A DNA stretch of 64,000 nt, taken from positions 204,345 to 268,344 of IMG/VR virus record IMGVR_UViG_3300049217_000071. One strand, given 5' to 3'. Made by a program: the position numbers and the translations under genes. Each line of letters opens with the position of its first letter. Position 1 is the first letter of the stretch. Under the pieces are notes generated by a model. That model did not search any database, was not told the origin of the DNA, and saw only the letters and a program-made list of their open reading frames with translations. Below are positions 1-58,982 of the stretch, one piece after another.

Positions 1-2
1 TG

Positions 3-2282
3 TTAGGAATCCATCAAGCGGATCCTATCAAGTATAATCTGATCTTCGCCCGATTCCACAACAAGGAGAAGTCTAGCTTCCCAGATATTGATACGGACTT
101 TGCTCCATCAGGTCGTGAGAAAGTGCAGAACTATCTCCGACAGAAATATGGTGACGACCACGTAGCTCACGTGTCCAACGTCAATACCATTACGCCCAAA
201 GTGTATGCCAGAGATATTGCACGTGCTTGCGAACTAGGCGGTTCCAAAGATGAGGCGGTCAAGATTGGTAATGAGGTGGCAGACTGTTTGCCAGCCGAAA
301 TCCATTCCATCGATGAAGCTTTGACCAAAGTTCCTTTGTTTGCCGAGTATGTCAAGAAGTATCCTGAGTTTGAGAAATACAAAGACATCTGTGGCAAGTA
401 TCGTGCTTGGTCTACTCACGCAGGTGGTATCGTTATCTCAGCCCGTCCTTTGACCGGATTGGTGCCGCTCAGAAAAGATAAGGATGGCGCTCTCGCTATT
501 GAGTATGATAAGGATAAGGCCGAAGAAAACGGTCTGGTCAAGATGGATACCTTGGGCCTTTCTACCCTGGATATCATTGGTCAAACTATGCAACTGATCA
601 AGGAAGCTGGTAAGCCATTGCCTGCTGAACCTATGGATTATGATGTGTATGACAAGGAAACCTATGACGTCATTTCTGGTGGCGATACCTTCTGCGTTTT
701 CCAGTTGGGAACCAGCGGAGGCACGGTGGATTTGTGCCGTCGTATCAAGCCTAACAGCATCAATGATTTGGCCAACATCAACGCTTTGGCCAGACCTTCC
801 GCTCGTGATATGCGCAATGACTTTATCAAGACGCGTAATGGGGAAAGGCCTATGTCTCTCTTGCACCCCAACCTAGGCCGTGCTTTCAATAGCACCTACG
901 GATTCGGTTTGTATGAAGAGTGTTTGATGTATCTGGCTCAGGATATTGCCGGTTGGAGTTTGCATTCGGCTGACCGTTTGCGTAAGCTGACCAAAGAAAA
1001 AGGCAAGAACCCCAAGAAGGCTCAGGAATGGAGAACAGAGTTCATCAATGACGCTGTCAAAAACAATGTCAATGAAACCATTGCCAAGAGAATCTGGGAC
1101 GAAGTTGTGGATAAGTTCCAAGGCTACGGCTTCAACGTTTCTCACGCTGTGCTGTATTCGATGACTGGCTACAAGACGGCCTTTCTGAAAGCTCATTATC
1201 CAATTGAGTTTCTAATGGCCAACTTGATGGCGGAAGTCAAATCTAATACTCCTGATGCTAGAGGCAACATTGAGAAGATCAAGAAAGAGCTACGCAAGCA
1301 TCGTGTCAAGGTAGTGCCGCCCGATGTCAATAAGTCCCAACTGGTTTACACCATTGAAGATGGCAATCGACTCATCACCGGCTTGGATGCTATCAAGTTT
1401 GTGGGTGAGGACGCCATTAAAGACATTATCAGTAAGAGGCCCTTCAAGGACTTTTTCGATTTTATGGTGCGTGTCAGCTCTAAAGCTGTGCGAGCCAATA
1501 GCATTCAAGCTCTGGCTGCCTGTGGCGCCTTGGACTCTTTCAAGATTCCGCGTAAGCTAATGTTCTTGTATTGCTCGGACTATCGCAAGAAGCTACAAGT
1601 TTGGTTGAAGAAGCACGATCCCAATGTGGATCAGTTTGTGTATCCATATCCGTCCGAACCGGATTGGAGCGATCCTGAGCTATATGCTTTGGAACAGTAT
1701 TATTTGGGTGAGTCTTTCATCTGTCGACCGGCCCTGGCCTATGGCAATTTCTTCAAGGATGATCACAAGACAACCCAAGATGTCAAGAAGGCCAAAGACA
1801 AAACCAACGTCAGTTCTTTCAAGGGAATTGTGCGTAGCTTCTTTGAGTTCCGAGTCAAAAAGGAAACCAGTAAGTATTACGGCAAGCCAATGATCAAAGC
1901 TGTCTTGGAAGATAAGAATGGTGATCAATGCACCTGCACCATCTTCCCCGATCGTTGGGAAACGGTCAAGCAACGTATTCAGGAACTCAACAAGAAGGTG
2001 GAATTTGGGGTGGGCATTGCTCTGCACTTTGCTGGCAACACCAATAGCTATGAAGATTATATGGGTATCATCTTGGACAATCTGTTCAATATAGCTATTC
2101 CGCCTGGATTGCCGGTTGACTTGAAAGCCAAGAGAATCAATCTCAAGGAAGCTAGAGCCAAGCTTTCGCCGCAAGAGTTGGGTAAAAAGGTCAGAGATAT
2201 CAAGGACTTGTTTGAGGAAATTGAAGACGTCCTATATGACGAGGGCCTCATCGATTTAGAGGATGATCCCGAAGATGACTGA
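3..2282 (+). CDS. dnaE: DNA polymerase III alpha subunit (DnaE), 5'-truncated by the window edge
   Basis: The frame is open from position 3 and includes SFPDIDTDF (catalytic motif) upstream of the listed ORF. Also HAGGIVIS, KMDTLGL, GYGFNVSHA and a C-terminal OB-fold-like region. Confidence 0.95.
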   Translation, partial: LGIHQADPIKYNLIFARFHNKEKSSFPDIDTDFAPSGREKVQNYLRQKYGDDHVAHVSNVNTITPKVYARDIARACELGGSKDEAVKIGNEVADCLPAEIHSIDEALTKVPLFAEYVKKYPEFEKYKDICGKYRAWSTHAGGIVISARPLTGLVPLRKDKDGALAIEYDKDKAEENGLVKMDTLGLSTLDIIGQTMQLIKEAGKPLPAEPMDYDVYDKETYDVISGGDTFCVFQLGTSGGTVDLCRRIKPNSINDLANINALARPSARDMRNDFIKTRNGERPMSLLHPNLGRAFNSTYGFGLYEECLMYLAQDIAGWSLHSADRLRKLTKEKGKNPKKAQEWRTEFINDAVKNNVNETIAKRIWDEVVDKFQGYGFNVSHAVLYSMTGYKTAFLKAHYPIEFLMANLMAEVKSNTPDARGNIEKIKKELRKHRVKVVPPDVNKSQLVYTIEDGNRLITGLDAIKFVGEDAIKDIISKRPFKDFFDFMVRVSSKAVRANSIQALAACGALDSFKIPRKLMFLYCSDYRKKLQVWLKKHDPNVDQFVYPYPSEPDWSDPELYALEQYYLGESFICRPALAYGNFFKDDHKTTQDVKKAKDKTNVSSFKGIVRSFFEFRVKKETSKYYGKPMIKAVLEDKNGDQCTCTIFPDRWETVKQRIQELNKKVEFGVGIALHFAGNTNSYEDYMGIILDNLFNIAIPPGLPVDLKAKRINLKEARAKLSPQELGKKVRDIKDLFEEIEDVLYDEGLIDLEDDPEDD

Positions 2283-2423
2283 TATATATGATAAGAATCG
2301 ACACAGAAAATAACAAATAATAACAAAACCTACTAATAGTTGGTCATTTCGATATGCACGATGTCAAAAAGTGTTATATATGTGATGACACCAGGCTCTC
2401 TGGGAAATGATAAGAAAGTATTT

Positions 2424-3425
2424 ATGAAGCTGAATGATTGGGCCAAAAAGGCAGGAGTGAAGTATTTGACCGCTTACAGGTGGTTCAAGAACGGCACCCT
2501 ACCTGTGCCAGCTTATCAAACTGATTCAGGAACCATCATTGTGCAAGACAATTCTGAAGTATCGGAGCAAAATATGTCTGGCAACTCTGGTGATGCAATG
2601 TCCGTCTTATTGAAAAAGACGGTCGAGTTTAGTAAGAACAATTCTTCTATCGAAGACTTTGCCGCTTATGTTATTTCCAACTTTCAACTAAAATTGAATG
2701 GCACAGCTCCCGATGGTCCAAGATATTCCAAGAACAAGCCAAAGTCAGAAGATATACAGAAGCATTTTCAGCAGTTTATTCCTGATAAAGGAAAAGAAGA
2801 ACAGCTAAAGAGTATCAAAGCTCTTATCAAAGAACAAAACAAGGGAAAAGAAACTCTCTGTTATCCAGCCTCTGCTGTTGACAAGAGGATGAATGAAGAC
2901 AAACAAAATCTCGGCCAGCTACCAACCACCGATGATCTAGGATTTATCAGCTCTGATGAATTCGTAAGTGATGATCGTGTCGATGATTGGTGTGCCGGCG
3001 ATATTGTTGAAGGTTCGGTTACACAAAGTGTTGATTTAGATTCAACTCCACAACAAATCAACTATACTGGCTCTACTAATCTAGCCTTCAACAATAACTC
3101 TAATACTCTATCAGCCAATGATAACACTATGCCTGGCACCAACTTAGGCAGTAGTGGCACCGTATCTAGTGCTTTGGCCGATTATCGCACACTTGCTGCT
3201 GTTCTTGGTGGCACTGCAACTGCCTGTTCCGCTACCCCTTTTCAGGGCACGGCATCTTCCTGGGCCCCAACTGATGGTGGCGTTTATTTCAACTCGGTTC
3301 AGCAGTCGGCTACTCCCTTTATGCCTACCAAAAAGGAACTACAATCGGCTGTCAAGGTTATAGAAACGGCAGATACTGATCAACCACGTAGCAGACGCGG
3401 CCGTAAGCCGTTCAAGAAGGTATAA
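2424..3425 (+). CDS. Hypothetical protein with N-terminal IS607 TnpA-like HTH and low-complexity C-terminus
   Basis: MKLNDWAKKAGVKYLTAYRWFKNGTLPVPAYQTDSGTIIV resembles the MerR-like DNA-binding N-terminus of IS607 serine transposases. No serine-recombinase catalytic domain follows. The start could be further upstream (ORF open from 2340). Confidence 0.7.
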   Translation: MKLNDWAKKAGVKYLTAYRWFKNGTLPVPAYQTDSGTIIVQDNSEVSEQNMSGNSGDAMSVLLKKTVEFSKNNSSIEDFAAYVISNFQLKLNGTAPDGPRYSKNKPKSEDIQKHFQQFIPDKGKEEQLKSIKALIKEQNKGKETLCYPASAVDKRMNEDKQNLGQLPTTDDLGFISSDEFVSDDRVDDWCAGDIVEGSVTQSVDLDSTPQQINYTGSTNLAFNNNSNTLSANDNTMPGTNLGSSGTVSSALADYRTLAAVLGGTATACSATPFQGTASSWAPTDGGVYFNSVQQSATPFMPTKKELQSAVKVIETADTDQPRSRRGRKPFKKV

Positions 3426-3514
3426 TGACTAAGTTTATCAAGAAACATCCCTGGCTTTTATTTCAAGAAGGTATAATGACTAAGTTTATCAAGAAACATC
3501 CCTGGCTTTTATTT
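3411..3514. repeat. Perfect 51-bp tandem duplication spanning a stop/RBS/start junction
   Basis: ttcaagaaggtataatgactaagtttatcaagaaacatccctggcttttat occurs at 3411 and again at 3462; identity runs to 3514. Confidence 0.95.
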
Positions 3515-3994
3515 AAGTGCATTGCACTTACCTCCTGGTTTTGCGGCTTCTTGGCCAAGCATTTGACCAAAGCTATGCTCCTTTTGCTAGACCTCAAGAA
3601 TAAAGATCCTAACCCACCTCCGCCACCCGCTCCAAGAGAGCCTTCTTTCGAAGATCAGATGCAAACTACCGCTCAAAAAGGCAATCTCTTCTCCGTTGCG
3701 ACTCGTGAGAGACCTAAATTCAATTTCCCGTATATTCCTGAGTGGGTAGCCAAGTCTTTCAAGGATCATACTAAGCACCCGCTTCATAATGTGAAGTTGA
3801 AGCCACCATCATTTTTGCCAATGGCCTCCAAACCGGCTCCAGAAGCACCGCTGGCTCCTACCGTAGCTCTCGAAACCACGCTTGAGGTAGGACGTGCAGC
3901 GATTGATAATCTGCGCCAAGCTGTTTCCAATATAGAAAAGGCTGTAGAGCTACCACCAACCCGCAAACTCAAGAAATCAAGTAAGAAGGGCTAA
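3425..3994 (+). CDS. Hypothetical Pro-rich protein with possible N-terminal hydrophobic segment
   Basis: 189-aa ORF abutting both neighbours, with aagaagg before the ATG. The duplication gives a second in-frame start at 3476. Confidence 0.7.
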   Translation: MTKFIKKHPWLLFQEGIMTKFIKKHPWLLFKCIALTSWFCGFLAKHLTKAMLLLLDLKNKDPNPPPPPAPREPSFEDQMQTTAQKGNLFSVATRERPKFNFPYIPEWVAKSFKDHTKHPLHNVKLKPPSFLPMASKPAPEAPLAPTVALETTLEVGRAAIDNLRQAVSNIEKAVELPPTRKLKKSSKKG

Positions 3995-3995
3995 T

Positions 3996-5165
3996 ATGCA
4001 ATTACATCCTACTCAACTCGTCAAGACTTTTCTTCAGGACAAACCAGATTTAATGCAATCCTATGTGGATTGGGGAACTGTATTTGTGGAATACGCCCTT
4101 GCTCCTTTGGGAGGCATTCTATTGTATCTAATAGATGTGCAAGGATTAGACCCAAACACTTCATCTATCCAAAAGTATTGCCGAGAATTAGAAGAGGCTG
4201 TGGCTAATGTGCAAGACACCAAAGATTTCGATTCTGATTATGATCTTTCTTGGGTAACTAAGAAGTGGCAAGATGCCAATAGGGGACTGAAGGCTGTGCA
4301 ATTGACTCAGGAGAAATTCAGGGAACTAACTGATTTGAGCGATATAGCAGATAAGCCGGCCGAAGTAGTCGTCAATGGTCGAGTAGCAGACAGTGAGGAT
4401 GAGTTCTTTGCCAAATGCACCGAAATCAACCGTGTAGCGCCCCCTGCCCCAAAGCGAGAAATTCCTATCACCACTGAAGAGCAAGAAGCTCGTGATCAGC
4501 GTAAGCGCGATGTTCTAGAAAAAATGAAAGCCAAGATAGATTTGAGCAGCAAGTATGGTCGTCAAGAGTATAGAAAAGTGGTAGCAGAAGAGGATATCTT
4601 GGACAATAATACCAAGTTCAATCCAGGTGGTTTTATGGAAGACAAGCTTAATGAATTAGAAGAGCTACTTCAAAAAATGGAAAAGGACTCTCCTCCAAAG
4701 TCTAAGCCAACCAAGAAGGCTAACAAGATTACTAAGGTCAATCGAATCAATAAGCGCCCTTTCATCAAGAAGGAGCCGGCTACTCGTTTGTCCGATGATA
4801 ATCTGTTGCGTGCCGAGAAGTTAGCTCGTGAAATGGTGGTCAAGGGGCTTTGCGATGACAACAATGTTGCCATTGAAGCACAGATTGCTGAATTGGCTAG
4901 TCTCTCGAAGCCTTTAGAGGATTTGGCAAAGATTATCAAACGTCATACGCCCAAGATACAGTTTTCCAAACGGGCTCATAAAGAAGCAGAGGAGATACAA
5001 ACCCTAATCAAAAAGGGTCATTTAGATCCGAAAGATTTAGATGAACTGGTAAACAATGGTGCTCGTCAAGAAAGTGTTGATTGTTGGAAGCAACAACATA
5101 ATCACGAGTATAATGAAGCTACCAAGTTCAAGGGCAACTTCAGAAGGTCTCCTTCCAAAGGATAA
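3996..5165 (+). CDS. Hypothetical protein; C-terminus paralogous to the protease-scaffold C-terminus
   Basis: RAEKLAREMVVKGLC...RHTP and HKEAEEIQTLIKKGHLDPKDLDELV...W align by eye with segments of 34805..38494. Confidence 0.75.
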   Translation: MQLHPTQLVKTFLQDKPDLMQSYVDWGTVFVEYALAPLGGILLYLIDVQGLDPNTSSIQKYCRELEEAVANVQDTKDFDSDYDLSWVTKKWQDANRGLKAVQLTQEKFRELTDLSDIADKPAEVVVNGRVADSEDEFFAKCTEINRVAPPAPKREIPITTEEQEARDQRKRDVLEKMKAKIDLSSKYGRQEYRKVVAEEDILDNNTKFNPGGFMEDKLNELEELLQKMEKDSPPKSKPTKKANKITKVNRINKRPFIKKEPATRLSDDNLLRAEKLAREMVVKGLCDDNNVAIEAQIAELASLSKPLEDLAKIIKRHTPKIQFSKRAHKEAEEIQTLIKKGHLDPKDLDELVNNGARQESVDCWKQQHNHEYNEATKFKGNFRRSPSKG

Positions 5166-5167
5166 TT

Positions 5168-5626
5168 ATGCCAATCAGAAGAGTCAAGCAATATTCCGAT
5201 CGCGGAAGTATCAAGAACCTGCACAACGAGGACGATGACAACTATCCTCCGACTGATTTAGAGCTACGACTTAAGCAACTGTATGAGCGTGCCGTAGAAA
5301 CCAGAGACCAGGGCCTATCGGATTCCTTAGGTTTCATTACGATGAATAGTAAATCTATTGATCCGGTATCTGTTTATAGACACCGAGAATATGTTGAGTC
5401 TCTAAAGTCTAAACTAACTACTACTGAAAATATGAAGCAGATAGTGGATGCTATGCCCTTTGTTGACCCAGCGCTCGCTTGCCATCCACTTTCTCTATCC
5501 GATATCAGGAAAGCGCAGGCCAACTCTACTTACGCCATTCATCGAGTAGAAGAGTTTGTCAAGACGGCTGACGCCAATGGAAACATTTCCCACCGCAGCC
5601 TTAGAAGTTTTAGAAGAGTGAGTTAA
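5168..5626 (+). CDS. Hypothetical protein
   Basis: 152-aa ORF tightly packed between neighbours on the coding strand. Confidence 0.7.
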   Translation: MPIRRVKQYSDRGSIKNLHNEDDDNYPPTDLELRLKQLYERAVETRDQGLSDSLGFITMNSKSIDPVSVYRHREYVESLKSKLTTTENMKQIVDAMPFVDPALACHPLSLSDIRKAQANSTYAIHRVEEFVKTADANGNISHRSLRSFRRVS

Positions 5627-5627
5627 T

Positions 5628-6455
5628 ATGAAGTGTATAAGCTGTGAAACAGAAATCAATCCAAAGTGGAAACACGCCATTGATATCAACGTCTGCCCTT
5701 TTTGTGGACAGAACATTCTCGAAGAGCATCTCAAGAACTTGTTGGCGGATCTAGCCAAAACGATGCTCGCTTTGCAACAGTATCCTGATCAAGTCAATGA
5801 TTGGCTGCTCTCTAACTACAACTATGTCAAGACCGACTCCCCAGATCTAGCCTCTTTCATTCCAAAGGATACTATCAAGGAACTTCGTAAGGCCATTGAT
5901 GATGAAGAGTTTGAGAATAAGAAGCGCACTATCAAAGTCAAGACCGCTGACGGGGAACAGGAGGTGGAGGTGCAAAAGATTCAATCTGATGCGAAAACCA
6001 ACTCCTTTTTCGAGCGAGCCGAAGCCCTCCGAGATCCTCCCAAGAAAAAAGGAGAGGAGCCGGAAGCCCCTAAAAGTATTGCCGAAAAGACTCAGCATAT
6101 TAAGCAAATGGCGCAGCGAATCAAAAAAGAAGCCTCCCAAGGTATTGTCGGCCAAGCTGACCTGGCATCTATGATGTCGGCCGAGGGCGGTGGTGAAGTA
6201 GAAAATCCTGAGTTCGTGGCCGAATTACAGTCCGTGCTTTCGGGCGGTGATATAGTCAGTTCAGCCTTGCCAGAACCGGCCGGAGGTGACGATGACGTTA
6301 TTCCGGGTGCCGAGAATGTAGTTTCTAGAATGGCTAATATGGTGGGTAACAAGACTACAGCTCAAGAACGCGATATGAAGACTTTGCAGGAAATGCAAAA
6401 CAGAGTGCAGAACACCTCTAAGAAATTGGGTAAGGGTGGTTTCAGTCGAGCTTGA
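5628..6455 (+). CDS. Hypothetical protein with N-terminal Zn ribbon
   Basis: MKCISC...CPFCG at the N-terminus; charged, probably disordered remainder. Confidence 0.75.
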   Translation: MKCISCETEINPKWKHAIDINVCPFCGQNILEEHLKNLLADLAKTMLALQQYPDQVNDWLLSNYNYVKTDSPDLASFIPKDTIKELRKAIDDEEFENKKRTIKVKTADGEQEVEVQKIQSDAKTNSFFERAEALRDPPKKKGEEPEAPKSIAEKTQHIKQMAQRIKKEASQGIVGQADLASMMSAEGGGEVENPEFVAELQSVLSGGDIVSSALPEPAGGDDDVIPGAENVVSRMANMVGNKTTAQERDMKTLQEMQNRVQNTSKKLGKGGFSRA

Positions 6456-6476
6456 TTTTCAGAAAGAGTAAGTGCA

Positions 6477-6767
6477 ATGGGAATCCGAGTAGTCGACAAC
6501 AAAAAGCTGGATATGACGGATGATGAGTGGACGATGTATCAGCAAATCATCAAGTCTTACACAACCCTCAGTAATAAGGGCGAAGACCTTTTTATGGAGC
6601 TTTTCGAAACTGATGACGAAGGAATTATTGTCTTTCTTAGGCCACCTTCCAAACGTCAAACCAGCTTGCAGGTCTTCCTCTTTTTGATGGCCCTGATGCA
6701 GCACCAACACCTGCGATCTATGCGGAAACAGGTGACCGAAGCCATCGCGGAAATGAAGAAGAAATAA
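6477..6767 (+). CDS. Hypothetical protein
   Basis: 96-aa ORF in operon position. Confidence 0.7.
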   Translation: MGIRVVDNKKLDMTDDEWTMYQQIIKSYTTLSNKGEDLFMELFETDDEGIIVFLRPPSKRQTSLQVFLFLMALMQHQHLRSMRKQVTEAIAEMKKK

Positions 6768-6835
6768 GCGCGTTCATTAGTTTATTTTGTCGAGATAAAG
6801 TTCGTTATATTACGTATTACAGAAAGAAGACAGAC

Positions 6836-7345: not shown

Positions 7346-7356
7346 TGGGAGATAAA

Positions 7357-8559: not shown

Positions 8560-8561
8560 TA

Positions 8562-9277: not shown

Positions 9278-9311
9278 TGTGATGAATAGATTACGATCGA
9301 TGTTTGTTAAG

Positions 9312-50479: not shown

Positions 50480-50511
50480 TTCAGCCTGATTGACTAACTA
50501 AAGATACAGAG

Positions 50512-50540
50512 AAGGTCCATAGGAAACTATGGACCTTTTC
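50512..50540. terminator. Intrinsic terminator after the MCP (shared with the convergent HNH gene)
   Basis: aaggtccatag-gaaa-ctatggacctt, perfect 11-bp stem. Confidence 0.85.
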
Positions 50541-51117: not shown

Positions 51118-51123
51118 ATCCAA

Positions 51124-51152
51124 ACCTTAACCATTATCTCTGTGTTTGTCAA
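51124..51152 (-). promoter_or_regulatory. Sigma70-like promoter, probably leaderless
   Basis: TTGACA (51152-51147), 17 nt, TAAGGT (51129-51124), then 6 nt to the ATG at 51117. Confidence 0.55.
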
Positions 51153-51178
51153 GCCTTACCATTTTTTGGCATACTGAT

Positions 51179-51724: not shown

Positions 51725-51727
51725 TTG

Positions 51728-52960
51728 TTAGTATTGTCTGGCTATTTCTAAGAGCCTATATTTGGTATTGTGTTCAGGATGACGCAAAATCTCCAAATAA
51801 CACTCATCCAAAGCTTTCTTGATACGGGGGCCGGCCACCATTCCAGCATTTAGCAAATCATCTCCATTTATTTGCATTTCACGCTTGGAAAAGACGATTT
51901 CGGTTTGGTAGGCGTCTAATAGCTTAATCGGTATTTCTTGGGCCGCACTTAACCCTATAAATTGCTGCAAGGTCTGTTCCCAAGGGTCGGGAGCATGGTT
52001 TTTGAGGACCGCCATAAAGCTCTTATAAGATGAAATCGTGTTTTTATCCTGGAAAATAGAAAACCGCTCCCCTAATTCCAAAAGAAATAGAGTTTTCTTG
52101 ATTTCTCGGTTGGAAAACTTCAAGTTTAGCAGTTCTTCTTTGACCTGAGGGACAGGTAATTTGTTATACAGGAAGGCTAGACGAGTCTCTAGCTCCCCCA
52201 TACACCTGTCTTGGTGTGGAAGTAAAGGGAGCACTCGCCGGGCCAGTAGAGGGCAAGCAATGTCTAAAGCTCCCGATTTCTGTAGAAGCTGCAAACCATA
52301 GGAGGCTTGTCCCGTCATCAAGATTTTGCACAACTCATCTTGAATACGTTCCTTGGAAACCTTTTTGAGCGTTTCCAAACTATCTTTCATACCTTGAAAA
52401 GTAGCTTGGTCGATAGTATACCCAAAACGTGCGGCAAATCGTGCTACTCGCATGATACGCAGCCCGTCTTCTTGAAACCTAACGGTAGGTTTACCTACGG
52501 CTCGGATCAAGCCATTTTGGAGGTCAGTATATCCGTCATATGGATCTACCATACGATGAGATAGTGGATCATAGGCGATAGCGTTGATGGTCAAGTCTCG
52601 ACGGGACAAGTCTTGTTCCACATTCATGACGAAAAAGACTTCCTCCGGCCTACGACCGTCTTTGTATTCTCCTTCAATACGGAAGGTGGTCACCTCGAAA
52701 TGATTCTCCACCCCTTCATCCATACAGACGGTGACGGTTCCATGCTGCAAACCCGTAGGGATGGTTTTAGGAAAGAGCTTCAGCACCTTTTCAGGCGAAG
52801 CGTCGGTAGTAATATCCCAGTCTTTAGGGATGTGTCCAAGAATCAAATCTCGTACGCATCCGCCTACTATATAGGCCTGATAATTATGTTGATTGAGGGT
52901 ACGACATACCTCAATGGCCAAAGGGTGAATTAGGTCTAATGAAAGTTGTATGGGTTTCAT
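51728..52960 (-). CDS. cca: CCA-adding tRNA nucleotidyltransferase
   Basis: YIVGGCVRD, DWDITT, EVTTFR, Y.DGRRP loop, DLSRRDLTINA, RFQEDGLRIMRVARF, SKERI, INGDDL. Confidence 0.92.
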   Translation of the reverse strand: MKPIQLSLDLIHPLAIEVCRTLNQHNYQAYIVGGCVRDLILGHIPKDWDITTDASPEKVLKLFPKTIPTGLQHGTVTVCMDEGVENHFEVTTFRIEGEYKDGRRPEEVFFVMNVEQDLSRRDLTINAIAYDPLSHRMVDPYDGYTDLQNGLIRAVGKPTVRFQEDGLRIMRVARFAARFGYTIDQATFQGMKDSLETLKKVSKERIQDELCKILMTGQASYGLQLLQKSGALDIACPLLARRVLPLLPHQDRCMGELETRLAFLYNKLPVPQVKEELLNLKFSNREIKKTLFLLELGERFSIFQDKNTISSYKSFMAVLKNHAPDPWEQTLQQFIGLSAAQEIPIKLLDAYQTEIVFSKREMQINGDDLLNAGMVAGPRIKKALDECYLEILRHPEHNTKYRLLEIARQY

Positions 52961-52967
52961 AGCGGGC

Positions 52968-52995
52968 ATCGTAAAATTTACAAATTACGTGTCAA
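52968..52995 (-). promoter_or_regulatory. Sigma70-like promoter, probably leaderless
   Basis: TTGACA (52995-52990), 16 nt, TACGAT (52973-52968), then 7 nt to the ATG at 52960. Confidence 0.45.
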
Positions 52996-53072
52996 GGTCG
53001 CCCTCTCAAAAAACCGTCCAAAAGTGTAATAAAAAGGCATCATATTAGAGTTCTGTCTAAAGATAGAGGAAT

Positions 53073-53939
53073 ATGCGACTTTTATTCGAGGTTTCTGAAA
53101 TATACAATCTGATTTCTAGAGGCGCCCAAAATGTGCTTGCTAGAAAGCAGTCTATGTTGCTGAGAAAAATAGCTTTGGAGTCTGTATCTTCTGGTAAAGG
53201 TTTTACTAAACAGGCTTTTGATACTCGTCGAATTAACCAAGAAACGGACTACATTCCACGTAGGGGGCTACAAAGCTATCATAAAAGTGAGAAGTTTATT
53301 TCTGATGCCATGGCTGTGAAGGTACAAGCTTTTGCTAAACTGGCCAAGATATTAGATCAACTTAAACTAGAGTATGGTAGGGAGCCGGAATGGCAAGAAA
53401 GTTATACTAGAGTACTCAATGCTGCCATCAATAAAAGTCTCCGCACGGAACAGACGGACGAGGATTTTAGTGATTCGCAACCATCCATGGCTAGTCTGAG
53501 TTATTTAGAAGAACTGATGTATGTTAGATATAGGCTAACACCAGAAGGTATTATGAGTATGTCGGAAGAAAATCTGCGCACCGCTATTCTCAATAAAGAT
53601 GAGCTTTTGGTGCGTCAAGGTATTTCTAACCCAACACGTCCTATCGAAATAACTCCGGGGGATGTTTCCAAATACAGTTATGATCAAATGATGGAAAAAA
53701 TGCTATCTACCATGGCTCAAGTGATGAGCGCCTATAAGCCTCCGCAGCCTGATGATAACTTGACTAGTAAGTTATTTGATGTCAAAGCCACTAAAGAATC
53801 ACCAGAAATAGAGAGAACCGTTACTATCACCATCAAGGACAAGATTGCTGATAAACTTGAAAAGAGGAGTCAGGAATCCTTGGAGGACAAAATTACCATT
53901 GATTCACTTGATGAATTGGTTGTGGAGAACTCAAAATGA
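53073..53939 (+). CDS. Hypothetical protein (probable virion protein)
   Basis: gagga RBS; motif at 53028 upstream; RKIAL and TKQAF. Confidence 0.78.
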   Translation: MRLLFEVSEIYNLISRGAQNVLARKQSMLLRKIALESVSSGKGFTKQAFDTRRINQETDYIPRRGLQSYHKSEKFISDAMAVKVQAFAKLAKILDQLKLEYGREPEWQESYTRVLNAAINKSLRTEQTDEDFSDSQPSMASLSYLEELMYVRYRLTPEGIMSMSEENLRTAILNKDELLVRQGISNPTRPIEITPGDVSKYSYDQMMEKMLSTMAQVMSAYKPPQPDDNLTSKLFDVKATKESPEIERTVTITIKDKIADKLEKRSQESLEDKITIDSLDELVVENSK

Positions 53940-54631
53940 GTAGCGAATCAGAGTTCGCATACGCGCCCAAATACAATACTCACTTTATTGTCAAAAACAC
54001 TTGTACAGATAATCACAAAACTATCTTCATTTTCAATTATCCAATCAACTGGGGACAAACCAGAGATATTCTAGCCATTCCAGGAATAGAAGAGGCAGAC
54101 ATTCGAGCTTCTCTTCTCAAAGGTGTTCTGCGACATAAATTTCTAAATGGTGATATCAGTCTAGTGGCCAGCAATATTGATCTGTTGCAATTCAGCACCA
54201 AACAACGCGCTTTCCTGGAAAGTTTTGGTTTCAGTACAGGCGTTCAAGTCGGCTATAACGAGTTGGATGGCTATGTGCAGAGTTTGCTATCTGGTGGCGG
54301 TGGAGGTGGAATCACTCCTGCTCAACACGAAACTTTGAGACAGCTTATTCATTTTATTGATGAGGGTCCAGGTGATGGTTTTGCTTCAGGAGCTTTTAAG
54401 GTCACTCTACCACTGGCCAGTCCCTTTCCAACCTCGATTACTTGGTACCTCAGTATGGCTATGTCACAGAAACTTGTGGAAAAGTTTATTACTTACAACG
54501 CAAGTAAGTTCCCGATTACTATTCATTGGAATATGTATGATACTGATGGGGTGACAATCATTCATACCGTAATAGATACAATAGTTTACAGCGCAGCTTT
54601 CGAAGCTACCAGAACCAGGGTAATAAGCTAA
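53936..54631 (+). CDS. Hypothetical structural protein
   Basis: 231 aa, two-domain appearance split by SGGGGGG. Confidence 0.75.
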   Translation: MSSESEFAYAPKYNTHFIVKNTCTDNHKTIFIFNYPINWGQTRDILAIPGIEEADIRASLLKGVLRHKFLNGDISLVASNIDLLQFSTKQRAFLESFGFSTGVQVGYNELDGYVQSLLSGGGGGGITPAQHETLRQLIHFIDEGPGDGFASGAFKVTLPLASPFPTSITWYLSMAMSQKLVEKFITYNASKFPITIHWNMYDTDGVTIIHTVIDTIVYSAAFEATRTRVIS

Positions 54632-54657
54632 CATAGGGTAAAGAAAGAGAAAGTAAT

Positions 54658-55155
54658 ATGTCCGCCGATTCTCCAGCAGCAATACTATTTGACGAACTTG
54701 GTAATCCGGTTGGGGTTATCTTTGATGGCACAGAATATCGTTTGCAGACTCAAACCACTATTACGGATGGTTATGAGGCTGGCCCAGTAGCAGTCAAGCC
54801 GCCTTTTATTGCGGCTGATTCCGCCGACCCCGCCCTAGTAGTTGCTATCTCTCCCAACAACCCAATTACTACTTCTGTAGCTCGTCCGGCTAACAACAAC
54901 ACTACGAGTGTTGCGGCTTCCACTTCTAACGCAGTGCTACTTGCTTCCAATTCGATTAGATTGGGAGCCACTCTATATAATGATTCCTCGTCTGTACTTT
55001 ATATGAAACTAGGCGCTACCGCTAGTTTGACTGATTTTACCAACAGGATATTTCCATCTTGCTACTATGAAGTTCCATTTGGTTATACCGGAGAAATAGA
55101 CGGTTTCTGGGTGACTGCTGTTGGACATGCTAGAGTAGGCGAACTAGTTCCATAA
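54658..55155 (+). CDS. Fibre/appendage-like structural protein (shortest member of a 3-gene family)
   Basis: Shares the N-terminal SP...L(F/Y) start and the C-terminal ~80-aa domain (ND...LY...Y(Y/W)E.P..(Y/F).G.(I/V).G.W) with the next two genes. Confidence 0.7.
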   Translation: MSADSPAAILFDELGNPVGVIFDGTEYRLQTQTTITDGYEAGPVAVKPPFIAADSADPALVVAISPNNPITTSVARPANNNTTSVAASTSNAVLLASNSIRLGATLYNDSSSVLYMKLGATASLTDFTNRIFPSCYYEVPFGYTGEIDGFWVTAVGHARVGELVP

Positions 55156-55222: not shown

Positions 55223-56539
55223 ATGTCAAGCCAATCACCAGTAGTAGTTTTATACAGCTCGGACGGTTATGAATTAGGGGTGGATTCTGGCATTGCCATT
55301 CCAGCTAATACTAGAGGGCTTCTGTTTGCAGGCTCTGATGGAACTAATGCAAGATTTGTTTTAACAGATATTTCTGGACATTTAATTACCGTCAGTGATG
55401 GACCAACTGCTGCCACTCCTCCAGCCGATGCAAGTTTAGCAGGAGCTGTGGTTAATACCACTGCACTGTCTGGTTTAACCAACACAGATATGTATCCACT
55501 CTCACTTACGACAGCAGCTTTGCTACGTATTGACGGTGTGTATCCTACAGCGGCTGCCGCCCCCTCTACCGATGCTATGTATGTGGCTGGCGCTGTAACT
55601 ACGGCTGCACCTAGCTACACTACTGGTCAAATGGATCCACTATCCCTTAACTTGGCTGGTGGTTTACGTATTGACGGTGTTTCCGCTACCGGCGCTGCAA
55701 CTGGTGCTACCGCTATGTTGTCTGGTGGTGCTGTTACTACCGCTGCTCCAGCTTATACGACTGGCCAAATGGATCCATTGTCCCTAACTACTCTTGGAGG
55801 CTTGCGCATTGATGGCGTTTATGCCGTTGCAACTGCTAATGCTACTGCTGCTGACGTAGGAAGCGTTGGAGGTTATGTTACTACGGCTGCCCCGACTTAT
55901 ACCACGGGTCAATTGAACCCAATTTCTCTAAACACTGCTGGTGGCTTACGTCTTGACGGTGTTTCTGCTACCGCAGCTACAACTGGTGGCACGGCTATGT
56001 TGTCTGGTGGTGCTGTTACTACCGCTGCTCCAACTTACACAACCGGTCAAATGGATCCGTTGTCCCTAACTACTCTTGGAGGCTTGCGCATTGATGGCGT
56101 TTATGCCGTTGCAACTGCTAATGCTACTGCCGCAGATGTAACCAATGTAGGTGGTTATGTTACTACCGCAGCTCCAACTTATACAACGGGTCAACTCAAT
56201 CCATTATCTTTGGATACTAGTGGTAACTTGCGTGTTGCTGGATCTTTTACTGCAACCAAGTCAACTACCACCGCTCTAACCAGCGTAGCTTCTAACGGAG
56301 CCAGTGTTACTTTATTGGCCGCTAATGCTGCCCGTATTAGCGCTACATTTTTCAATGATAGTCCAACCGAAATACTTTATCTTGGAATGACTTCTAATCC
56401 AGTTTCATTAACATCTTACTCAATCAAGTTAATGCCATATTCTTATTGGGAACTTCCAATTGATTATACCGGACAAATTAACGGCATTTGGAACAACCAA
56501 GCCGGTGGTGCTGTCAGGATTACAGAACTTACTCCTTAA
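55223..56539 (+). CDS. Fibre-like structural protein with internal repeats
   Basis: Ala/Thr/Gly-rich; six TTAAP.YTTGQ..PLSL...GGLR.DG units; family C-terminal domain. Confidence 0.8.
   Translation: MSSQSPVVVLYSSDGYELGVDSGIAIPANTRGLLFAGSDGTNARFVLTDISGHLITVSDGPTAATPPADASLAGAVVNTTALSGLTNTDMYPLSLTTAALLRIDGVYPTAAAAPSTDAMYVAGAVTTAAPSYTTGQMDPLSLNLAGGLRIDGVSATGAATGATAMLSGGAVTTAAPAYTTGQMDPLSLTTLGGLRIDGVYAVATANATAADVGSVGGYVTTAAPTYTTGQLNPISLNTAGGLRLDGVSATAATTGGTAMLSGGAVTTAAPTYTTGQMDPLSLTTLGGLRIDGVYAVATANATAADVTNVGGYVTTAAPTYTTGQLNPLSLDTSGNLRVAGSFTATKSTTTALTSVASNGASVTLLAANAARISATFFNDSPTEILYLGMTSNPVSLTSYSIKLMPYSYWELPIDYTGQINGIWNNQAGGAVRITELTP
55440..56250 (+). repeat. Six coding repeats of about 46-49 aa; highest identity at a 282-nt period
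   Basis: The stretch from 55712 recurs nearly identically from 55994. Confidence 0.9.
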
Positions 56540-56606: not shown

Positions 56607-58982
56607 ATGGCAGGCGAGTCACCGGTAGTCAATTTATTTAGCTCAGATGGCTATGAAATGGCCGTGGTTAATAGTGTATCTATTCCACCTAATACCAGGG
56701 GCTATTTGGTTGCCGGAACAGATGGAACTACCACCCGTATCATTTTGATGGACGGTTCATCTAGGGTAGTCGTGGTAGGAGCCGGCACAGCCGGTACCCC
56801 AGCCGGTGGAGTTCTAACTATTCAAGGTGTGGCTCTAGGAACTGCTGTCATAACTACTGATACATCAGATGGTGCTGTTTCTGGTGGTACGGCCGGCACT
56901 ACTTCTATGTTAACTGGTGGCGTTTTTAACTCTGGAGTTTTGTCATTAACAACTGGACAGCAAGCATCTCTTCAATTGACGGCCTCTGGCCAACTTAAGA
57001 CAGTAGCACAGTCAAGTACGGCAACTGGTGCTGCTACACCAGCTAACGCTTTTCTTATGGGTGGTGCGGCAACTACCGCTGCGCCCACTTATATCACGGG
57101 TGATTTAGAACCTCTATCTCTTAATTTGGCCGGCGGTTTAAGAGTAGATGGCTCTGGTGTTACGCAACCAATTTCTAACACACAAACAGCGGAAACTACG
57201 GCAGCCTGGACCAGTGCTACGGCCGTAAATACTACCTTAGCTTTAACAGTAACTAACTATGCATCTGTTGTAGTAACTATCAATCAAGGCTCTACTATTA
57301 CAGGAGGCGCTGTTACTTTTGAGGTTTCTGATACCGTAGCTGGCACTAACTGGTATCCAGTATCTACCGTAACTAGTTTTTCTGCGTTACCATCTGCCGC
57401 CTATGTTTTTGTAGCTAGCACTAACGTTGCGTTCCAATTGAATGTTTCTGGTCTTATACAGTTCAGAGCCAGACTTTCTACGGCCATCACCGGAACGGCC
57501 ACTATCAATATAGGTATTGCTGCTAGTGCCGCCTCTGCGCCTATTCAACAAGAACAATATGCTTTGTTAACGGATGGCGCTAACGGTCCAGTAGCAGTCA
57601 AAGCACCGTCCGTATCTGCTTTGACTACTGATCCTGCATTAGTAGTAGCTATCTCTCCCAATAACGGATCTGCTGGTTTATTGCCGGTCGCTCTTGGTGG
57701 TCCAGGCACTGTTGATGTTTTTGGACAGCTAACTTCGGCCCAACGCATTAACCAAGTTTCAATACCATTTTTTCAGGCCGCCCCCAGTTCGCTAATAACT
57801 GTAACAACAACCGGATCCGCTACGGCTACCCAAGGAACAGGCACTGGTATTTTTGCGACAGGAGCCACTTCATCCTCAGAAGTAAAAGGCGTTACTGCTG
57901 CGACAGTGGCATATTCGCCTCACTATGAATTATTTGCGGCATTTACGGCGGCATTTACTGCTGGTGTAGCTGGCACATATCAGAGAATTGGTCTTTACAA
58001 TACTACGGACGGGTTCTCCTTTGGATACAATGGAACGGCCTTTGGTCTCTGGTCGCGCTACAACAGCGTTGATACTTTTGTGGCGCAAACAAGCTGGAAC
58101 ATCGACAAACTTGCCGGATCTGTAAGTTCTAAATTTACCAGCTTGGGAGTGCCCCAGACATTAGTGCAAGCTGACATAAATCTTTATCGTATCAGATTTG
58201 GTTGGCTGGGTATTTCTCCGATTGTTTATGAAGTGATGGCCCCTGATGGGAATTGGGTTGTTGTTCATACCATTCTGCTTCCAAATAGTCAGACGACTGT
58301 TAGCGTTACTAATCCTAACTTGCCAATGACTATAGATGTCAATAACCAAGCTGTAGCTACTGCTTTGACGGTCACTTGTGGTTGTTGGGTGGCTGGTAGT
58401 GATGCTCCGGCTGCTGTCAAGCCAGCTTCTACTGCTGCGGTAGCTGCGGATGCTTCCATGGTAGTAGCTTTGAGCCCCAACAGTTTGTTGGCAGAAGCGG
58501 GCGTCACATCTTTAGGAACTACAACCAGTATTGCTGCTACATTACTAAATAATCAGGTCAATATGAATATAGTTGATCTGCAAGCAGGATCTAAATTAGA
58601 TCTAATCTATTATAAACTTGATGATTTATTTAATCTAATGGTAAGTGCCGGTATTAATACATATACTCCTATAAAAACTCAACGTTCTTATTCAACTACA
58701 CATACTACTTTTGCCGCAGCTACCTCGGCCAAGACATATTTGAATGTTAATACTTCAAGAACTGGCGCGACATTTATCAATGACATTGGCTCTACCAGTA
58801 ATTTATATCTTTTATTGGGAGCGGATGTGGGTGTGGCAGTTTCCGCCACTAACTATACCGTTCTGCTTGTGCCAAACGGATATTATGAACTACCATATGG
58901 GTTTTCGGGACGTGTGGATGGTATTTGGAGCGCCACTGTGGGCAACGTCTATATTACTGAGATATCTAACGGAAACCTATGA
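56607..58982 (+). CDS. Large fibre-like structural protein
   Basis: Shares the N-terminus and repeat unit with 55223, DPALVVAISPNN with 54658, and the family C-terminal domain; carries an extra beta-rich central domain. Confidence 0.8.
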   Translation: MAGESPVVNLFSSDGYEMAVVNSVSIPPNTRGYLVAGTDGTTTRIILMDGSSRVVVVGAGTAGTPAGGVLTIQGVALGTAVITTDTSDGAVSGGTAGTTSMLTGGVFNSGVLSLTTGQQASLQLTASGQLKTVAQSSTATGAATPANAFLMGGAATTAAPTYITGDLEPLSLNLAGGLRVDGSGVTQPISNTQTAETTAAWTSATAVNTTLALTVTNYASVVVTINQGSTITGGAVTFEVSDTVAGTNWYPVSTVTSFSALPSAAYVFVASTNVAFQLNVSGLIQFRARLSTAITGTATINIGIAASAASAPIQQEQYALLTDGANGPVAVKAPSVSALTTDPALVVAISPNNGSAGLLPVALGGPGTVDVFGQLTSAQRINQVSIPFFQAAPSSLITVTTTGSATATQGTGTGIFATGATSSSEVKGVTAATVAYSPHYELFAAFTAAFTAGVAGTYQRIGLYNTTDGFSFGYNGTAFGLWSRYNSVDTFVAQTSWNIDKLAGSVSSKFTSLGVPQTLVQADINLYRIRFGWLGISPIVYEVMAPDGNWVVVHTILLPNSQTTVSVTNPNLPMTIDVNNQAVATALTVTCGCWVAGSDAPAAVKPASTAAVAADASMVVALSPNSLLAEAGVTSLGTTTSIAATLLNNQVNMNIVDLQAGSKLDLIYYKLDDLFNLMVSAGINTYTPIKTQRSYSTTHTTFAAATSAKTYLNVNTSRTGATFINDIGSTSNLYLLLGADVGVAVSATNYTVLLVPNGYYELPYGFSGRVDGIWSATVGNVYITEISNGNL

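What the first reader, a model, noticed from the sequence alone, without database searches (positions are those of the whole stretch)
1..58982. TTAA is strongly avoided in core genes but not in the fibre cassette
By manual scan I find about one TTAA each in dnaE (2.3 kb), terL (1.9 kb), portal (1.9 kb) and MCP (1 kb), against about 22 in 55223-58982 (3.8 kb). ATT/GTT/TTT codons are common in core genes, yet before AAN codons they switch to ATC/GTC/TTC/CTC. This points to context-specific avoidance rather than simple codon bias. The protease-scaffold is intermediate (about 10 in 3.7 kb). Inference: long-term selection against a host TTAA-recognising defence (e.g. an MseI-like restriction system), with the fibre genes more recently acquired or under different constraint. 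Counts are by eye and approximate.
Basis: partly seen in the sequence, partly recalled or inferred. Interest (0 to 1): 0.6.

Follow-up and report, generated by a model that had tools for sequence, protein, structure and literature searches.

The report
Phage restriction-site avoidance, fibre genes exempt
This giant uncultured phage from a moss metagenome has removed TTAA and about nine other short palindromes that are typical restriction-enzyme sites from nearly all its DNA, but not from its tail-fibre block or a few mobile genes, which look like recent arrivals; this is a clean example of a known anti-restriction strategy.

Summary

After codon-preserving shuffling, TTAA observed/expected (O/E) is 0.17 in window core genes and 0.85 in the fibre pair (p 8e-10). 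NTT codons fall from 54-61% to 7% before AAN. Non-coding DNA and the base before TAA stops show the same depletion.

The window is the last 64 kb of a 268-kb, about 62%-complete megaphage contig. TTAA is only one of many avoided palindromes: GTAC, CATG, CTAG, CGCG, and the PstI, XhoI, SacI, BspEI and PvuII sites. Relatives with 74-88% portal identity do not avoid TTAA. Each has its own pattern, for example GGCC at 20 observed against 445 expected in one 447-kb genome.

TTAA tolerance follows low GC3 across the genome. It marks homing endonucleases, a restriction-modification (R-M) cassette, a sugar gene and the whole distal block 51.7-64 kb. The fibre pair still avoids GTAC, so it carries a different fingerprint.

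Best reading: lineage-specific Type II restriction avoidance, with recently imported DNA not yet purged. The host and its TTAA enzyme were not identified. This is a known kind of phenomenon. Avoidance also changes in nested steps along the genome, which is unexplained.

The parts
1..51727 (+). Resident core of the window: DNA polymerase, terL, portal, head and tail genes, MCP. TTAA is strongly purged here.
   Evidence: TTAA O/E is 0.17 after codon-preserving shuffling, 29/171.8 excluding the protease-scaffold. The NTT-to-NTC switch before AAN is present. Family matches: DNA polymerase 3-2282, terL 25607-27484, portal 27567-29480, MCP 49373-50479.
34805..38494 (+). Protease-scaffold fusion gene, the intermediate case.
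   Evidence: TTAA is 12/19.8 = 0.61, spread evenly along the gene. It also shows no avoidance of GTAC (7/8.5), CATG (8/12.1), CTAG (21/21) or CGCG (5/4.2). The head-maturation protease domain lies at residues 105-213. No segment has unusually high nucleotide identity to any sampled relative.
51728..55155 (.). Transition zone: a tRNA nucleotidyltransferase on the minus strand and three small genes with falling GC3.
   Evidence: The TTAA changepoint is at 51724/51728. TTAA O/E of 0.37 was computed for 51146-55155, and GC3 falls from 0.46 to 0.34. phrog_2244 matches 51728-52969. Identity to relatives drops to 41-73%.
55223..56539 (+). Fibre-like paralogue 1, with five 47-residue tandem repeats. 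TTAA is tolerated.
   Evidence: TTAA is 8/9.0 and GC3 is 0.29. Repeats lie at 55586-56241. It shares its N-terminus, repeats and C-terminus with the next gene. GTAC is 0/2.4.
56607..58982 (+). Fibre-like paralogue 2, a virion structural protein. TTAA is tolerated.
   Evidence: TTAA is 13/15.7 and GC3 is 0.33, but GTAC is 3/9.9. phrog_1645 virion structural protein matches at E 1e-21. The best relatives in IMG/VR are only 52% identical, in 12 loci.
59026..59622 (+). GIY-YIG-type homing endonuclease directly after fibre gene 2.
   Evidence: phrog_314 and phrog_5123 homing endonuclease match residues 91-283 of ORF 58744-59622. The first start codon after the fibre stop is at 59026.
59654..63852 (+). 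Distal block: two small ORFs and three glycine-rich paralogues. TTAA is tolerated, and so are PvuII sites.
   Evidence: TTAA is 13/16.0 and GC3 is 0.28-0.37. Gly_rich_2 (PF21722) matches three times, with phrog_863. The block holds 7 of the record's 15 CAGCTG sites. Repeat families D3-D6 lie here.

Best explanation
The phage lineage has been selected to lose recognition sites of Type II restriction enzymes carried by its unknown host or hosts. TTAA (MseI-type) is one such site. The others are GTAC, CATG, CTAG, CGCG, CTGCAG, CTCGAG, GAGCTC, TCCGGA and CAGCTG.

In resident genes the sites were removed by synonymous changes, such as NTT to NTC before AAN and TTA to other Leu codons before A. In non-coding DNA they were removed by neutral changes.

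DNA that entered the genome recently from other phages or bacteria still has TTAA at the density expected from its own codon usage. In the window this is the fibre or receptor-binding block with its homing endonuclease. Elsewhere in the record it is homing endonucleases, an EcoRI-family R-M cassette, a PARP-like gene and a GDP-mannose dehydratase.

Shown: the depletion, its independence of reading frame, its lineage specificity, the synonymous route of removal, and the link between tolerance and atypical composition or mobile genes.

Inferred: that restriction enzymes are the selective agent, and that the tolerant block is a recent import.
For: 1. Palindromes only. The five most depleted of 256 tetramers in the record are TTAA 0.28, GTAC 0.30, CATG 0.37, CTAG 0.43 and CGCG 0.61. 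The most depleted hexamers are CTGCAG 0/42, CTCGAG 1/41.5, GAGCTC 2/44, TCCGGA 4/29 and CAGCTG 15/67.
2. The depletion survives codon-preserving shuffling.
3. It acts at DNA level. It appears in both codon-junction frames. T precedes TAA stops in 14/204 genes against 41/176 for the other stops. Non-coding DNA has TTAA O/E 0.40, while TATA and ATAT stay near 1.0. All NTTAAN flank classes lie at 0.08-0.46.
4. It is lineage-specific. In 40 loci of at least 12 kb from relatives (portal 74-88% identical), TTAA O/E is 0.81-1.02 in 39. Those relatives avoid other words: GGCC near zero in about 18 loci, CTAG 0.04 in L041, ACGT 0.25 in L058. The complete relative G001 has GGCC 20/445 and TTAA 0.94. G003 has six-cutter sites at 0 against 13-94 expected.
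5. Direct orthologue test at conserved dipeptides. Of 143 TTAA in G003, 14 are kept here (10%, against a 38% baseline). Of 229 in G001, 7 are kept (3%). Reciprocally, of 87 GGCC here, 3 are kept in G001.
6. Tolerance marks imports. TTAA O/E falls steadily from 0.68 at GC3 below 0.34 to 0.07 at GC3 above 0.54 (Spearman -0.50, p 3e-8). The tolerant genes outside the window include LAGLIDADG, HNH and GIY-YIG endonucleases, an EcoRI-family endonuclease with a D12 methylase, a PARP-like gene and Gmd.
7. The fibre block differs from its surroundings. It has the lowest GC3, shifted third-position usage (p 7e-46) and an embedded homing endonuclease. Relatives are at most 52-54% identical over the pieces that align, while the MCP 5 kb upstream is 90-97% identical.
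8. The fibre pair has a different fingerprint: TTAA 22/21 but GTAC 3/19 and CATG 1/12 on the Markov null. Some relatives, such as L031 and L034, show a similar pattern.
9. It is not an assembly chimera. An independent 52-kb Logan contig at depth 26 runs from the core to 55741, across five TTAA of fibre gene 1. The following contigs have depth 23-26.
Against: - The host is unknown, so no cognate TTAA enzyme or methylase has been seen.
- 258 TTAA remain in the record. A four-cutter would therefore still cut the genome, and the benefit has to be per site or historical.
- No near-identical donor of the fibre block was found. 'Recent' rests on composition and context alone.
- The core protease-scaffold gene is also tolerant (0.61), with no sign of exchange.
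- Avoidance of CTAG, and of GTAC and CATG, changes in nested steps along a genome that is collinear with its relative. Simple patchwise import does not predict this.
- The phage carries at least three DNA methylases. These may protect some sites and relax selection.
Confidence: 0.62

Rival explanations
1. Positional or temporal exposure. Restriction acts mainly on the DNA that enters the cell first. Later-entering or later-needed DNA (the structural and fibre modules) would be shielded by early phage functions such as methylases or other anti-restriction proteins. Avoidance would then fade along the genome whatever the ancestry.
For: - Avoidance weakens in nested steps toward the structural module. 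CTAG switches off at about 172.5 kb of the record. GTAC and CATG weaken at about 213.5 kb. TTAA switches off at 256 kb.
- There is no synteny break against G003.
- G003 shows a milder version of the same pattern: TTAA 0.59-0.74 over 0-220 kb, and 0.7-1.0 from 220 kb to about 420 kb.
- A position effect of the first-injected region is documented for Type I R-M and Autographiviridae (PMC12455610).
- The phage encodes at least three methylases.
Against: - It does not predict the GC3 and codon-usage shift of the tolerant block.
- It does not explain isolated tolerant genes in the middle of purged regions, such as homing endonucleases and the R-M cassette.
- It does not explain why the fibre pair still avoids GTAC.
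- The contig end is an assembly break in mid-genome, not a physical end.
- The entry order of this phage's DNA is unknown.
Confidence: 0.12
2. Selection is now relaxed and the fibre genes simply turn over fast. The TTAA pressure would be historical, because of a host change or a newly gained protective methylase. Rapidly diversifying fibre genes would regain TTAA by mutation, while slowly evolving core genes keep their purged state.
For: - The fibre genes are the most divergent genes in the region.
- They contain tandem repeats and are paralogous.
- A D12 methylase lies in a low-GC3 island, so it may be a recent gain.
Against: - Regaining TTAA up to the codon-shuffle expectation would need synonymous sites to turn over completely.
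- It does not explain the lower GC3, or the retained GTAC avoidance in the same genes.
- The tolerant genes elsewhere are mobile elements, not fast-evolving residents.
Confidence: 0.1
3. The cause is not restriction. Candidates are mutational or dinucleotide bias, codon-pair or hidden-stop effects, DNA-structure constraints, avoidance of an insertion-sequence target, or self-avoidance of a phage-encoded TTAA nuclease.
For: - TpA-containing words are often somewhat rare in genomes (my own knowledge).
- TTAA contains TAA.
- The phage does encode nucleases, including an EcoRI-family enzyme.
Against: - The Markov and codon-shuffle nulls already absorb dinucleotide, trinucleotide and codon bias.
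- NTT is not avoided before A[CGT]N.
- TATA and ATAT are not depleted in non-coding DNA.
- Relatives with the same biology and the same genes do not avoid TTAA.
- The avoided set is exclusively palindromic and includes GC-rich six-mers.
- A self-nuclease would be lethal with 258 sites remaining.
Confidence: 0.05
4. Assembly artefact. The low-GC3, TTAA-rich end of the contig would come from a different, co-occurring phage joined on by the assembler.
For: - The block lies at the contig end.
- The composition changes there.
- The fibre repeats break assemblies.
Against: - A second assembler's 52-kb contig bridges from the core to 55741, inside fibre gene 1.
- Depth is the same on both sides of the repeat gap: 26, 23.3 and 25.9.
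- Gene order in 51-55 kb matches relatives G003 and L082.
- Caveat: both assemblies come from the same reads, and no contig spans 55742-56100.
Confidence: 0.04

Closest known systems
Recognition-site avoidance of orthodox Type II R-M systems by non-temperate dsDNA phages (Rusinov et al. 2018, PMC6286503; earlier work by Sharp, Karlin and Rocha cited from my own knowledge)
   Same: Short palindromic sites are under-represented against compositional expectation. Six-cutter sites are almost completely eliminated. The pattern differs between phages according to host. All of this is seen here.
   Different: No host or cognate enzyme is known here. At least ten sites are avoided at once in a genome of over 268 kb. 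The avoidance is clearly uneven within the genome, and that unevenness can be used to date imported genes.
Amelioration of horizontally acquired genes: atypical composition decays towards that of the recipient genome (Lawrence and Ochman, from my own knowledge)
   Same: Tolerant genes have atypical GC3 and codon usage and are enriched in mobile elements. TTAA O/E changes steadily with GC3.
   Different: The marker here is a selected word (a restriction site) rather than neutral base composition. No donor was identified.
Dependence of restriction on the first-injected genome region in Autographiviridae (PMC12455610)
   Same: Where a site lies in the genome matters for restriction escape. That could produce avoidance that depends on position, like the stepwise changes seen here.
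   Different: That case is a Type I system acting on a roughly 40-kb podovirus with known entry polarity. Here the sites are Type II-like, the genome is about 430 kb and the entry order is unknown. The link is a hypothesis only.
Mosaic, horizontally exchanged tail-fibre or receptor-binding cassettes of tailed phages (general knowledge)
   Same: The most divergent locus sits next to highly conserved head genes. There are paralogues with a shared N-terminal anchor and variable middle parts, and a homing endonuclease lies beside them.
   Different: The fibre function is inferred only from weak family matches (phrog_1645, Gly_rich_2, phrog_863) and from context. No structure or receptor is known.

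Membership tests
Restriction-site avoidance in a phage genome | The word is under-represented against a Markov null and a codon-preserving null | tested here: met
   TTAA O/E is 0.28 (Markov) and 0.21 (codon shuffle, z -37).
Restriction-site avoidance in a phage genome | The avoided words are short palindromes of Type II kind, not their non-palindromic neighbours | tested here: met
   The five lowest tetramers and the seven lowest hexamers are all palindromes. NTT before A[CGT]N is not avoided.
Restriction-site avoidance in a phage genome | The effect acts on DNA whatever the reading frame or coding status | tested here: met
   Both junction frames show it. The stop-codon context gives p 7e-6, and non-coding O/E is 0.40.
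Restriction-site avoidance in a phage genome | The pattern differs between related phages that have different hosts | tested here: met
   39 of 40 relatives' loci have TTAA at 0.81-1.02 and avoid other words instead. Whole genomes G001 and G003 agree, as does the orthologue test. The hosts themselves are unknown.
Restriction-site avoidance in a phage genome | The host encodes an R-M system with the avoided specificity | not testable with these tools
   No host could be predicted. terL is at most 26% identical to cultured phages. The Gmd search spread over many phyla. The window has no tRNA.
MseI-type (TTAA) enzyme as the agent | Depletion of the bare four-base word in every flanking context | tested here: met
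   All ten NTTAAN classes lie at 0.08-0.46. TTTAAA and CTTAAG are lowest, so six-base enzymes may add to the effect.
MseI-type (TTAA) enzyme as the agent | A TTAA-specific endonuclease and methylase pair, or TTAA methylation, in the host | not testable with these tools
   The host is unknown, and neither REBASE nor methylation data are available.
Recently imported, un-ameliorated DNA (fibre block 55223-63852) | Composition and codon usage unlike the resident genome | tested here: met
   GC3 is 0.28-0.37 against about 0.46. Third-position chi-square is 213, p 7e-46. NTT share is 85% against 60%.
Recently imported, un-ameliorated DNA (fibre block 55223-63852) | Association with mobile elements | tested here: met
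   A GIY-YIG homing endonuclease lies at 59026-59622. The other tolerant genes in the record are homing endonucleases and an R-M cassette.
Recently imported, un-ameliorated DNA (fibre block 55223-63852) | No close orthologues where relatives are otherwise collinear | tested here: met
   The fibre genes are at most 52-54% identical over the pieces that align, in 12 loci, and nothing matches in G001. The MCP is 90-97% identical.
Recently imported, un-ameliorated DNA (fibre block 55223-63852) | An identifiable donor with near-identical sequence, or a tree incongruent with the core | tested here: not met
   No near-identical copy exists in IMG/VR. No tree test was run, because homologues are too few and too distant.
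Tail fibre / receptor-binding proteins | Match to a fibre or structural family, and fibre-like architecture | tested here: inconclusive
   Matches are phrog_1645 'virion structural protein' at E 1e-21, Gly_rich_2 three times, and phrog_863 weakly. The two genes are paralogues with a shared N-terminus and 47-residue repeats. No fold was predicted.

The most novel reading that the evidence does not exclude
The nested steps in avoidance would be a record of how long each part of a roughly 430-kb genome lies unprotected during infection, through entry order or the timing of phage-encoded protection. They would not be a record of ancestry. The steps are: CTAG avoided only up to about 172 kb of the record, GTAC and CATG weakening at about 213 kb, and TTAA avoided up to 256 kb. 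Restriction 'shadows' would then map the infection programme of an uncultured megaphage from sequence alone.
Probability: 0.1. Interest if true: 0.75.

Novelty: new member of a known kind. Interest (0 to 1): 0.4.

Why it matters
Restriction-site avoidance is textbook knowledge, so the core finding is ordinary. Three things make this case useful.

- **A natural experiment.** More than 300 related megaphage contigs each carry a different palindrome fingerprint. That gives a host-linked signature for phages that have no cultured host. A candidate host should carry the matching set of enzymes: TTAA, GTAC, CATG, and the PstI, XhoI, SacI, BspEI and PvuII sites.
- **A marker for imports.** Local tolerance of an otherwise purged site picks out recently imported genes without any alignment. 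Here it finds the host-range block, homing endonucleases and an R-M cassette.
- **An open question.** The stepwise changes in avoidance along a collinear genome raise a testable question: does position in a very large phage genome alter exposure to restriction?

Tried and rejected
- **Megablast against cultured phages.** A 6.3-kb stretch of the window (terL, portal and two downstream genes) found no match. terL as protein is at most 26% identical to Bacillus and other phages, so it gives no host inference.
- **Host by a host-like gene.** GDP-mannose dehydratase against GTDB genomes gave a best hit of 68% (a Myxococcia MAG), then about 60% across Actinomycetota, Planctomycetota, Acidobacteriota and others.
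- **tRNAs in the window.** None found.
- **Possible host flank in relative G003.** IMG/VR labels G003 'provirus'. Its last 60 kb has GC of 0.49-0.57 and TTAA of 10 against 62 expected. The idea was rejected. The genes there are small and phage-like, and they have homologues at 13-49 kb of the complete phage G001. A stop-to-stop scan under other codes was only a coding-density check, and no alternative code is claimed. Code 11 fits the record, at 91.5% coding.
- **Assembly chimera at the composition shift.** Rejected on the Logan contigs. The repeat gap at 55742-56100 is not bridged.
- **Recent recombination patch inside the protease-scaffold gene.** There is no segment of raised identity to any relative, and TTAA is evenly spread. 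Its tolerance remains unexplained.
- **Replicate in G001.** I looked for a GGCC tolerance island in its fibre region. There are 4 sites in 307.6-316.5 kb out of 20 genome-wide. This is suggestive only.
- **C5 cytosine methylase in the record.** None found.
- This was a mistaken call of mine (the query was too short) and returned nothing.

Full report
**What the window is**

The 64-kb window is the last quarter of a 268,344-bp IMG/VR virus record (G000:C1:204345-268344). CheckV rates the record 62% complete, and its GC content is 44.7%. It reads well under code 11: 380 ORF-genes, 91.5% coding, mostly on the plus strand.

Family scans of the window give:
- a DnaE-type DNA polymerase at 3-2282
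- terL at 25607-27484
- portal at 27567-29480
- a protease-scaffold fusion at 34805-38494
- the major head protein at 49373-50479
- a tRNA nucleotidyltransferase at 51728-52969 (minus strand)
- two paralogous fibre-like structural genes at 55223-56539 and 56607-58982
- a GIY-YIG homing endonuclease at about 59026-59622
- three glycine-rich paralogues at 60873-63852

The DNA comes from a moss metagenome. More than 330 IMG/VR contigs, some up to 480 kb, encode a portal that is 72-89% identical (74-88% among the 40 longer loci analysed), so this is a large clade of uncultured megaphages. No cultured relative is close, since terL is at most 26% identical.

**Checking the observation**

There is one TTAA each in the polymerase, terL, portal and MCP, 22 in 55223-58982, and 12 in the protease-scaffold.

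TTAA is the most depleted of all 256 tetramers under a maximal-order Markov model. It is 93 observed against 216 expected in the window and 258 against 909 in the record.

It gives 208 observed against 974 +/- 21 for the record and 80 against 246 for the window.

| Group | TTAA observed/expected | O/E |
|---|---|---|
| Window core genes | 29/171.8 | 0.17 |
| Fibre pair 55223-58982 | 21/24.7 | 0.85 |
| Distal block 59654-63852 | 13/16.0 | 0.81 |
| Protease-scaffold | 12/19.8 | 0.61 |

Core against 55223-end differs at p 7.8e-10.

The codon switch is real and large. NTY codons end in T in 7% of cases before AAN, against 54% before other A-starting codons and 61% elsewhere (p 1.5e-246). The switch is absent from the fibre block.

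**What kind of depletion it is**

It acts on the DNA word.
- Both codon-junction frames show it.
- T is avoided just before TAA stop codons: 14/204 against 41/176 for the other stops.
- Non-coding DNA is depleted too (O/E 0.40), while TATA and ATAT there stay at 1.0.
- All ten NTTAAN flank classes are depleted.

TTAA is not alone.
- The five most depleted tetramers of the record are all palindromes: TTAA, GTAC, CATG, CTAG and CGCG.
- The most depleted hexamers are CTGCAG (0/42), CTCGAG (1/41.5), GAGCTC (2/44), TCCGGA (4/29) and CAGCTG (15/67).
- GTNAC and GGWCC are also low.

**Comparison with relatives**

In 40 loci of at least 12 kb around the portal of relatives, TTAA O/E is 0.81-1.02. The one exception is L081 at 0.54. 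Each relative instead has its own avoided words:
- GGCC at or near zero in about 18 loci
- CTAG 0.04 in L041
- GTAC 0.21 and CTAG 0.11 in L031
- ACGT 0.25 in L058

Two complete relatives were fetched whole. G001 (447 kb, GC 31%) has GGCC at 20 observed against 445 expected, and TTAA at 0.94. G003 (480 kb, GC 43%) has no CAGCTG, CTCGAG, CCTAGG, CCCGGG or GCGCGC at all, and TTAA at 0.75.

An orthologue test at conserved dipeptides shows the removal directly.

| Sites in one genome | Number | Kept in the other genome | Share kept |
|---|---|---|---|
| TTAA in G003, kept in this record | 143 | 14 | 10% |
| TTAA in G001, kept in this record | 229 | 7 | 3% |
| GGCC in this record, kept in G001 | 87 | 3 | 3% |

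The baseline retention of junction tetramers is 38% against G003 and 30% against G001.

So related genomes have each purged different palindromes through synonymous changes. This is what host-specific restriction pressure predicts, and it fits the literature on Type II site avoidance in virulent dsDNA phages (PMC6286503). It argues against mutational bias, codon-pair effects or any constraint shared by the clade.

**Why the fibre block is exempt**

TTAA tolerance is not a property of fibre genes as such. Across the record, TTAA O/E falls steadily from 0.68 in genes with GC3 below 0.34 to 0.07 in genes with GC3 above 0.54 (Spearman -0.50, p 3e-8).

Seven of the ten tolerant genes scanned outside the window are typical mobile or accessory genes; the other three have no Pfam match:
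- LAGLIDADG, HNH and GIY-YIG endonucleases
- an EcoRI-family endonuclease next to a D12 adenine methylase
- a PARP-like protein
- a GDP-mannose dehydratase

The block from 51.7 kb to the contig end is the largest such island. The changepoint is at 51724/51728.
- It has the lowest GC3 of the record (0.28-0.37).
- Its third-position usage differs from the core (p 7e-46).
- It contains a homing endonuclease.
- It is the least conserved part of an otherwise collinear region. The MCP is 90-97% identical to relatives, but the fibre genes reach at most 52-54% over the pieces that align, in only 12 loci, and have no match in G001.

The fibre pair is not free of avoidance in general. GTAC is 3 against 12.3 by codon shuffle and 3 against 19 by Markov. 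CATG is 1 against 12 by Markov. It therefore carries a fingerprint (TTAA present, GTAC and CATG absent) that differs from the resident genome but resembles some relatives, such as L031 and L034.

The distal glycine-rich block differs again. It holds 7 of the record's 15 CAGCTG sites.

I read these as imports from lineages exposed to other enzymes. No near-identical donor was found, so 'recent' is an inference.

**Is the block an assembly artefact?**

A second assembler's contig of 52 kb at depth 26 runs from the core to 55741. That is inside fibre gene 1 and across five of its TTAA sites. The next contigs have depths of 23 and 26.

The break lies in the 47-residue tandem repeats of fibre gene 1. 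Both assemblies use the same reads, and the 360-bp repeat gap is not bridged, so a small doubt remains.

**What remains unexplained**

1. The protease-scaffold is a core gene, yet it shows little or no avoidance of TTAA, GTAC, CATG, CTAG or CGCG. It has no sign of exchange with any sampled relative.
2. Avoidance changes in nested steps along the record.
   - CTAG O/E is 0.32 up to about 172.5 kb and 0.91 after that. In the window itself CTAG is not avoided at all (180/189).
   - GTAC and CATG weaken at about 213.5 kb, which is window position about 9 kb. Window 1-8500 has one GTAC and one CATG.
   - TTAA switches at 256 kb.
   - The record is collinear with G003 across all these points, and protein identity is similar on both sides.
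   - Successive module exchanges could produce this pattern. So could a position effect, in which late-entering DNA is shielded by early phage functions. The phage encodes at least three methylases. A position effect is documented for Type I systems and T7-like phages (PMC12455610). I give the position reading about 10%.
3. 258 TTAA sites remain. Any benefit must therefore accrue per site or be partly historical.

**Limits**

The host could not be predicted. The selective agent is inferred from pattern alone. The fibre function is inferred from weak family matches and from gene architecture.

**Verdict**

This is a clear new example of a known phenomenon, with one open question about the stepwise changes in avoidance along the genome.

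Noticed in passing
window 1-64000, and G000:C1 at about 172.5 kb: CTAG is not avoided anywhere in the window (180 observed against 189 expected by codon shuffle). In the first 172 kb of the same record it is strongly avoided (O/E 0.32). The switch is sharp (2*dLL 85), with no synteny break against relative G003.
   Followed up: partly
window 1-9000: The first 8.5 kb of the window has only one GTAC and one CATG, although about 15 and 25 are expected. From about 9 kb onward both become roughly half as depleted. The changepoints fall at record positions 213.3-213.7 kb.
   Followed up: partly
window 55223-58982: The two fibre-like genes are paralogues. They share an N-terminus (residues 1-60) and a C-terminal stretch of about 75 residues. 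A 47-residue repeat occurs five times in tandem at 55586-56241 and once more at 57060-57151. Independent contigs break inside these repeats.
   Followed up: yes
window 58744-59622 (probable start at 59026): A GIY-YIG-type homing endonuclease gene lies directly after the second fibre gene. The long ORF overlaps the end of the fibre gene, but the family match begins at residue 91.
   Followed up: yes
window 59654-64000: The three glycine-rich (PF21722) paralogues and their neighbours hold 7 of the whole record's 15 CAGCTG (PvuII) sites. This distal block therefore differs in fingerprint from both the core and the fibre pair. The contig ends inside this paralogue array.
   Followed up: partly
G000:C1:100417-101880 (locus L101), outside the window: A phage gene encodes a full WGR + PARP regulatory + PARP catalytic domain protein, that is, a poly(ADP-ribose) polymerase-like enzyme. 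It has low GC3 and tolerates TTAA.
   Followed up: no
G000:C1:186153-187965 (loci L107, L106), outside the window: An EcoRI-family restriction endonuclease lies next to a D12-class adenine methylase, so the phage carries an R-M cassette. It sits in a low-GC3, TTAA-tolerant island. Two more methylases lie at about 18965-19597 (N6_N4) and about 21808 (D12). No C5 methylase was found.
   Followed up: partly
relative G003 (IMGVR_UViG_3300028558_000791), 420-480 kb; loci L232-L234: The last 60 kb of this 480-kb relative jumps to GC 0.49-0.57. It has almost no TTAA (10 against 62 expected), although the rest of that genome avoids TTAA only mildly. IMG/VR labels the record 'provirus', but the genes there have homologues in the complete phage G001, so the segment is phage DNA.
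   Followed up: partly
relatives G001, G003 and loci L002-L081: Clade members carry very different palindrome fingerprints. GGCC is 20 against 445 expected in a 447-kb genome. CAGCTG, CTCGAG and CCTAGG are at zero in a 480-kb genome. CTAG is 0.04 in L041 and ACGT is 0.25 in L058. These fingerprints could serve as host-linkage signatures.
   Followed up: partly
window 34805-38494: The protease-scaffold gene shows no avoidance of GTAC, CATG, CTAG or CGCG and only weak avoidance of TTAA. It is nevertheless a conserved core gene, with no detectable recent exchange.
   Followed up: partly
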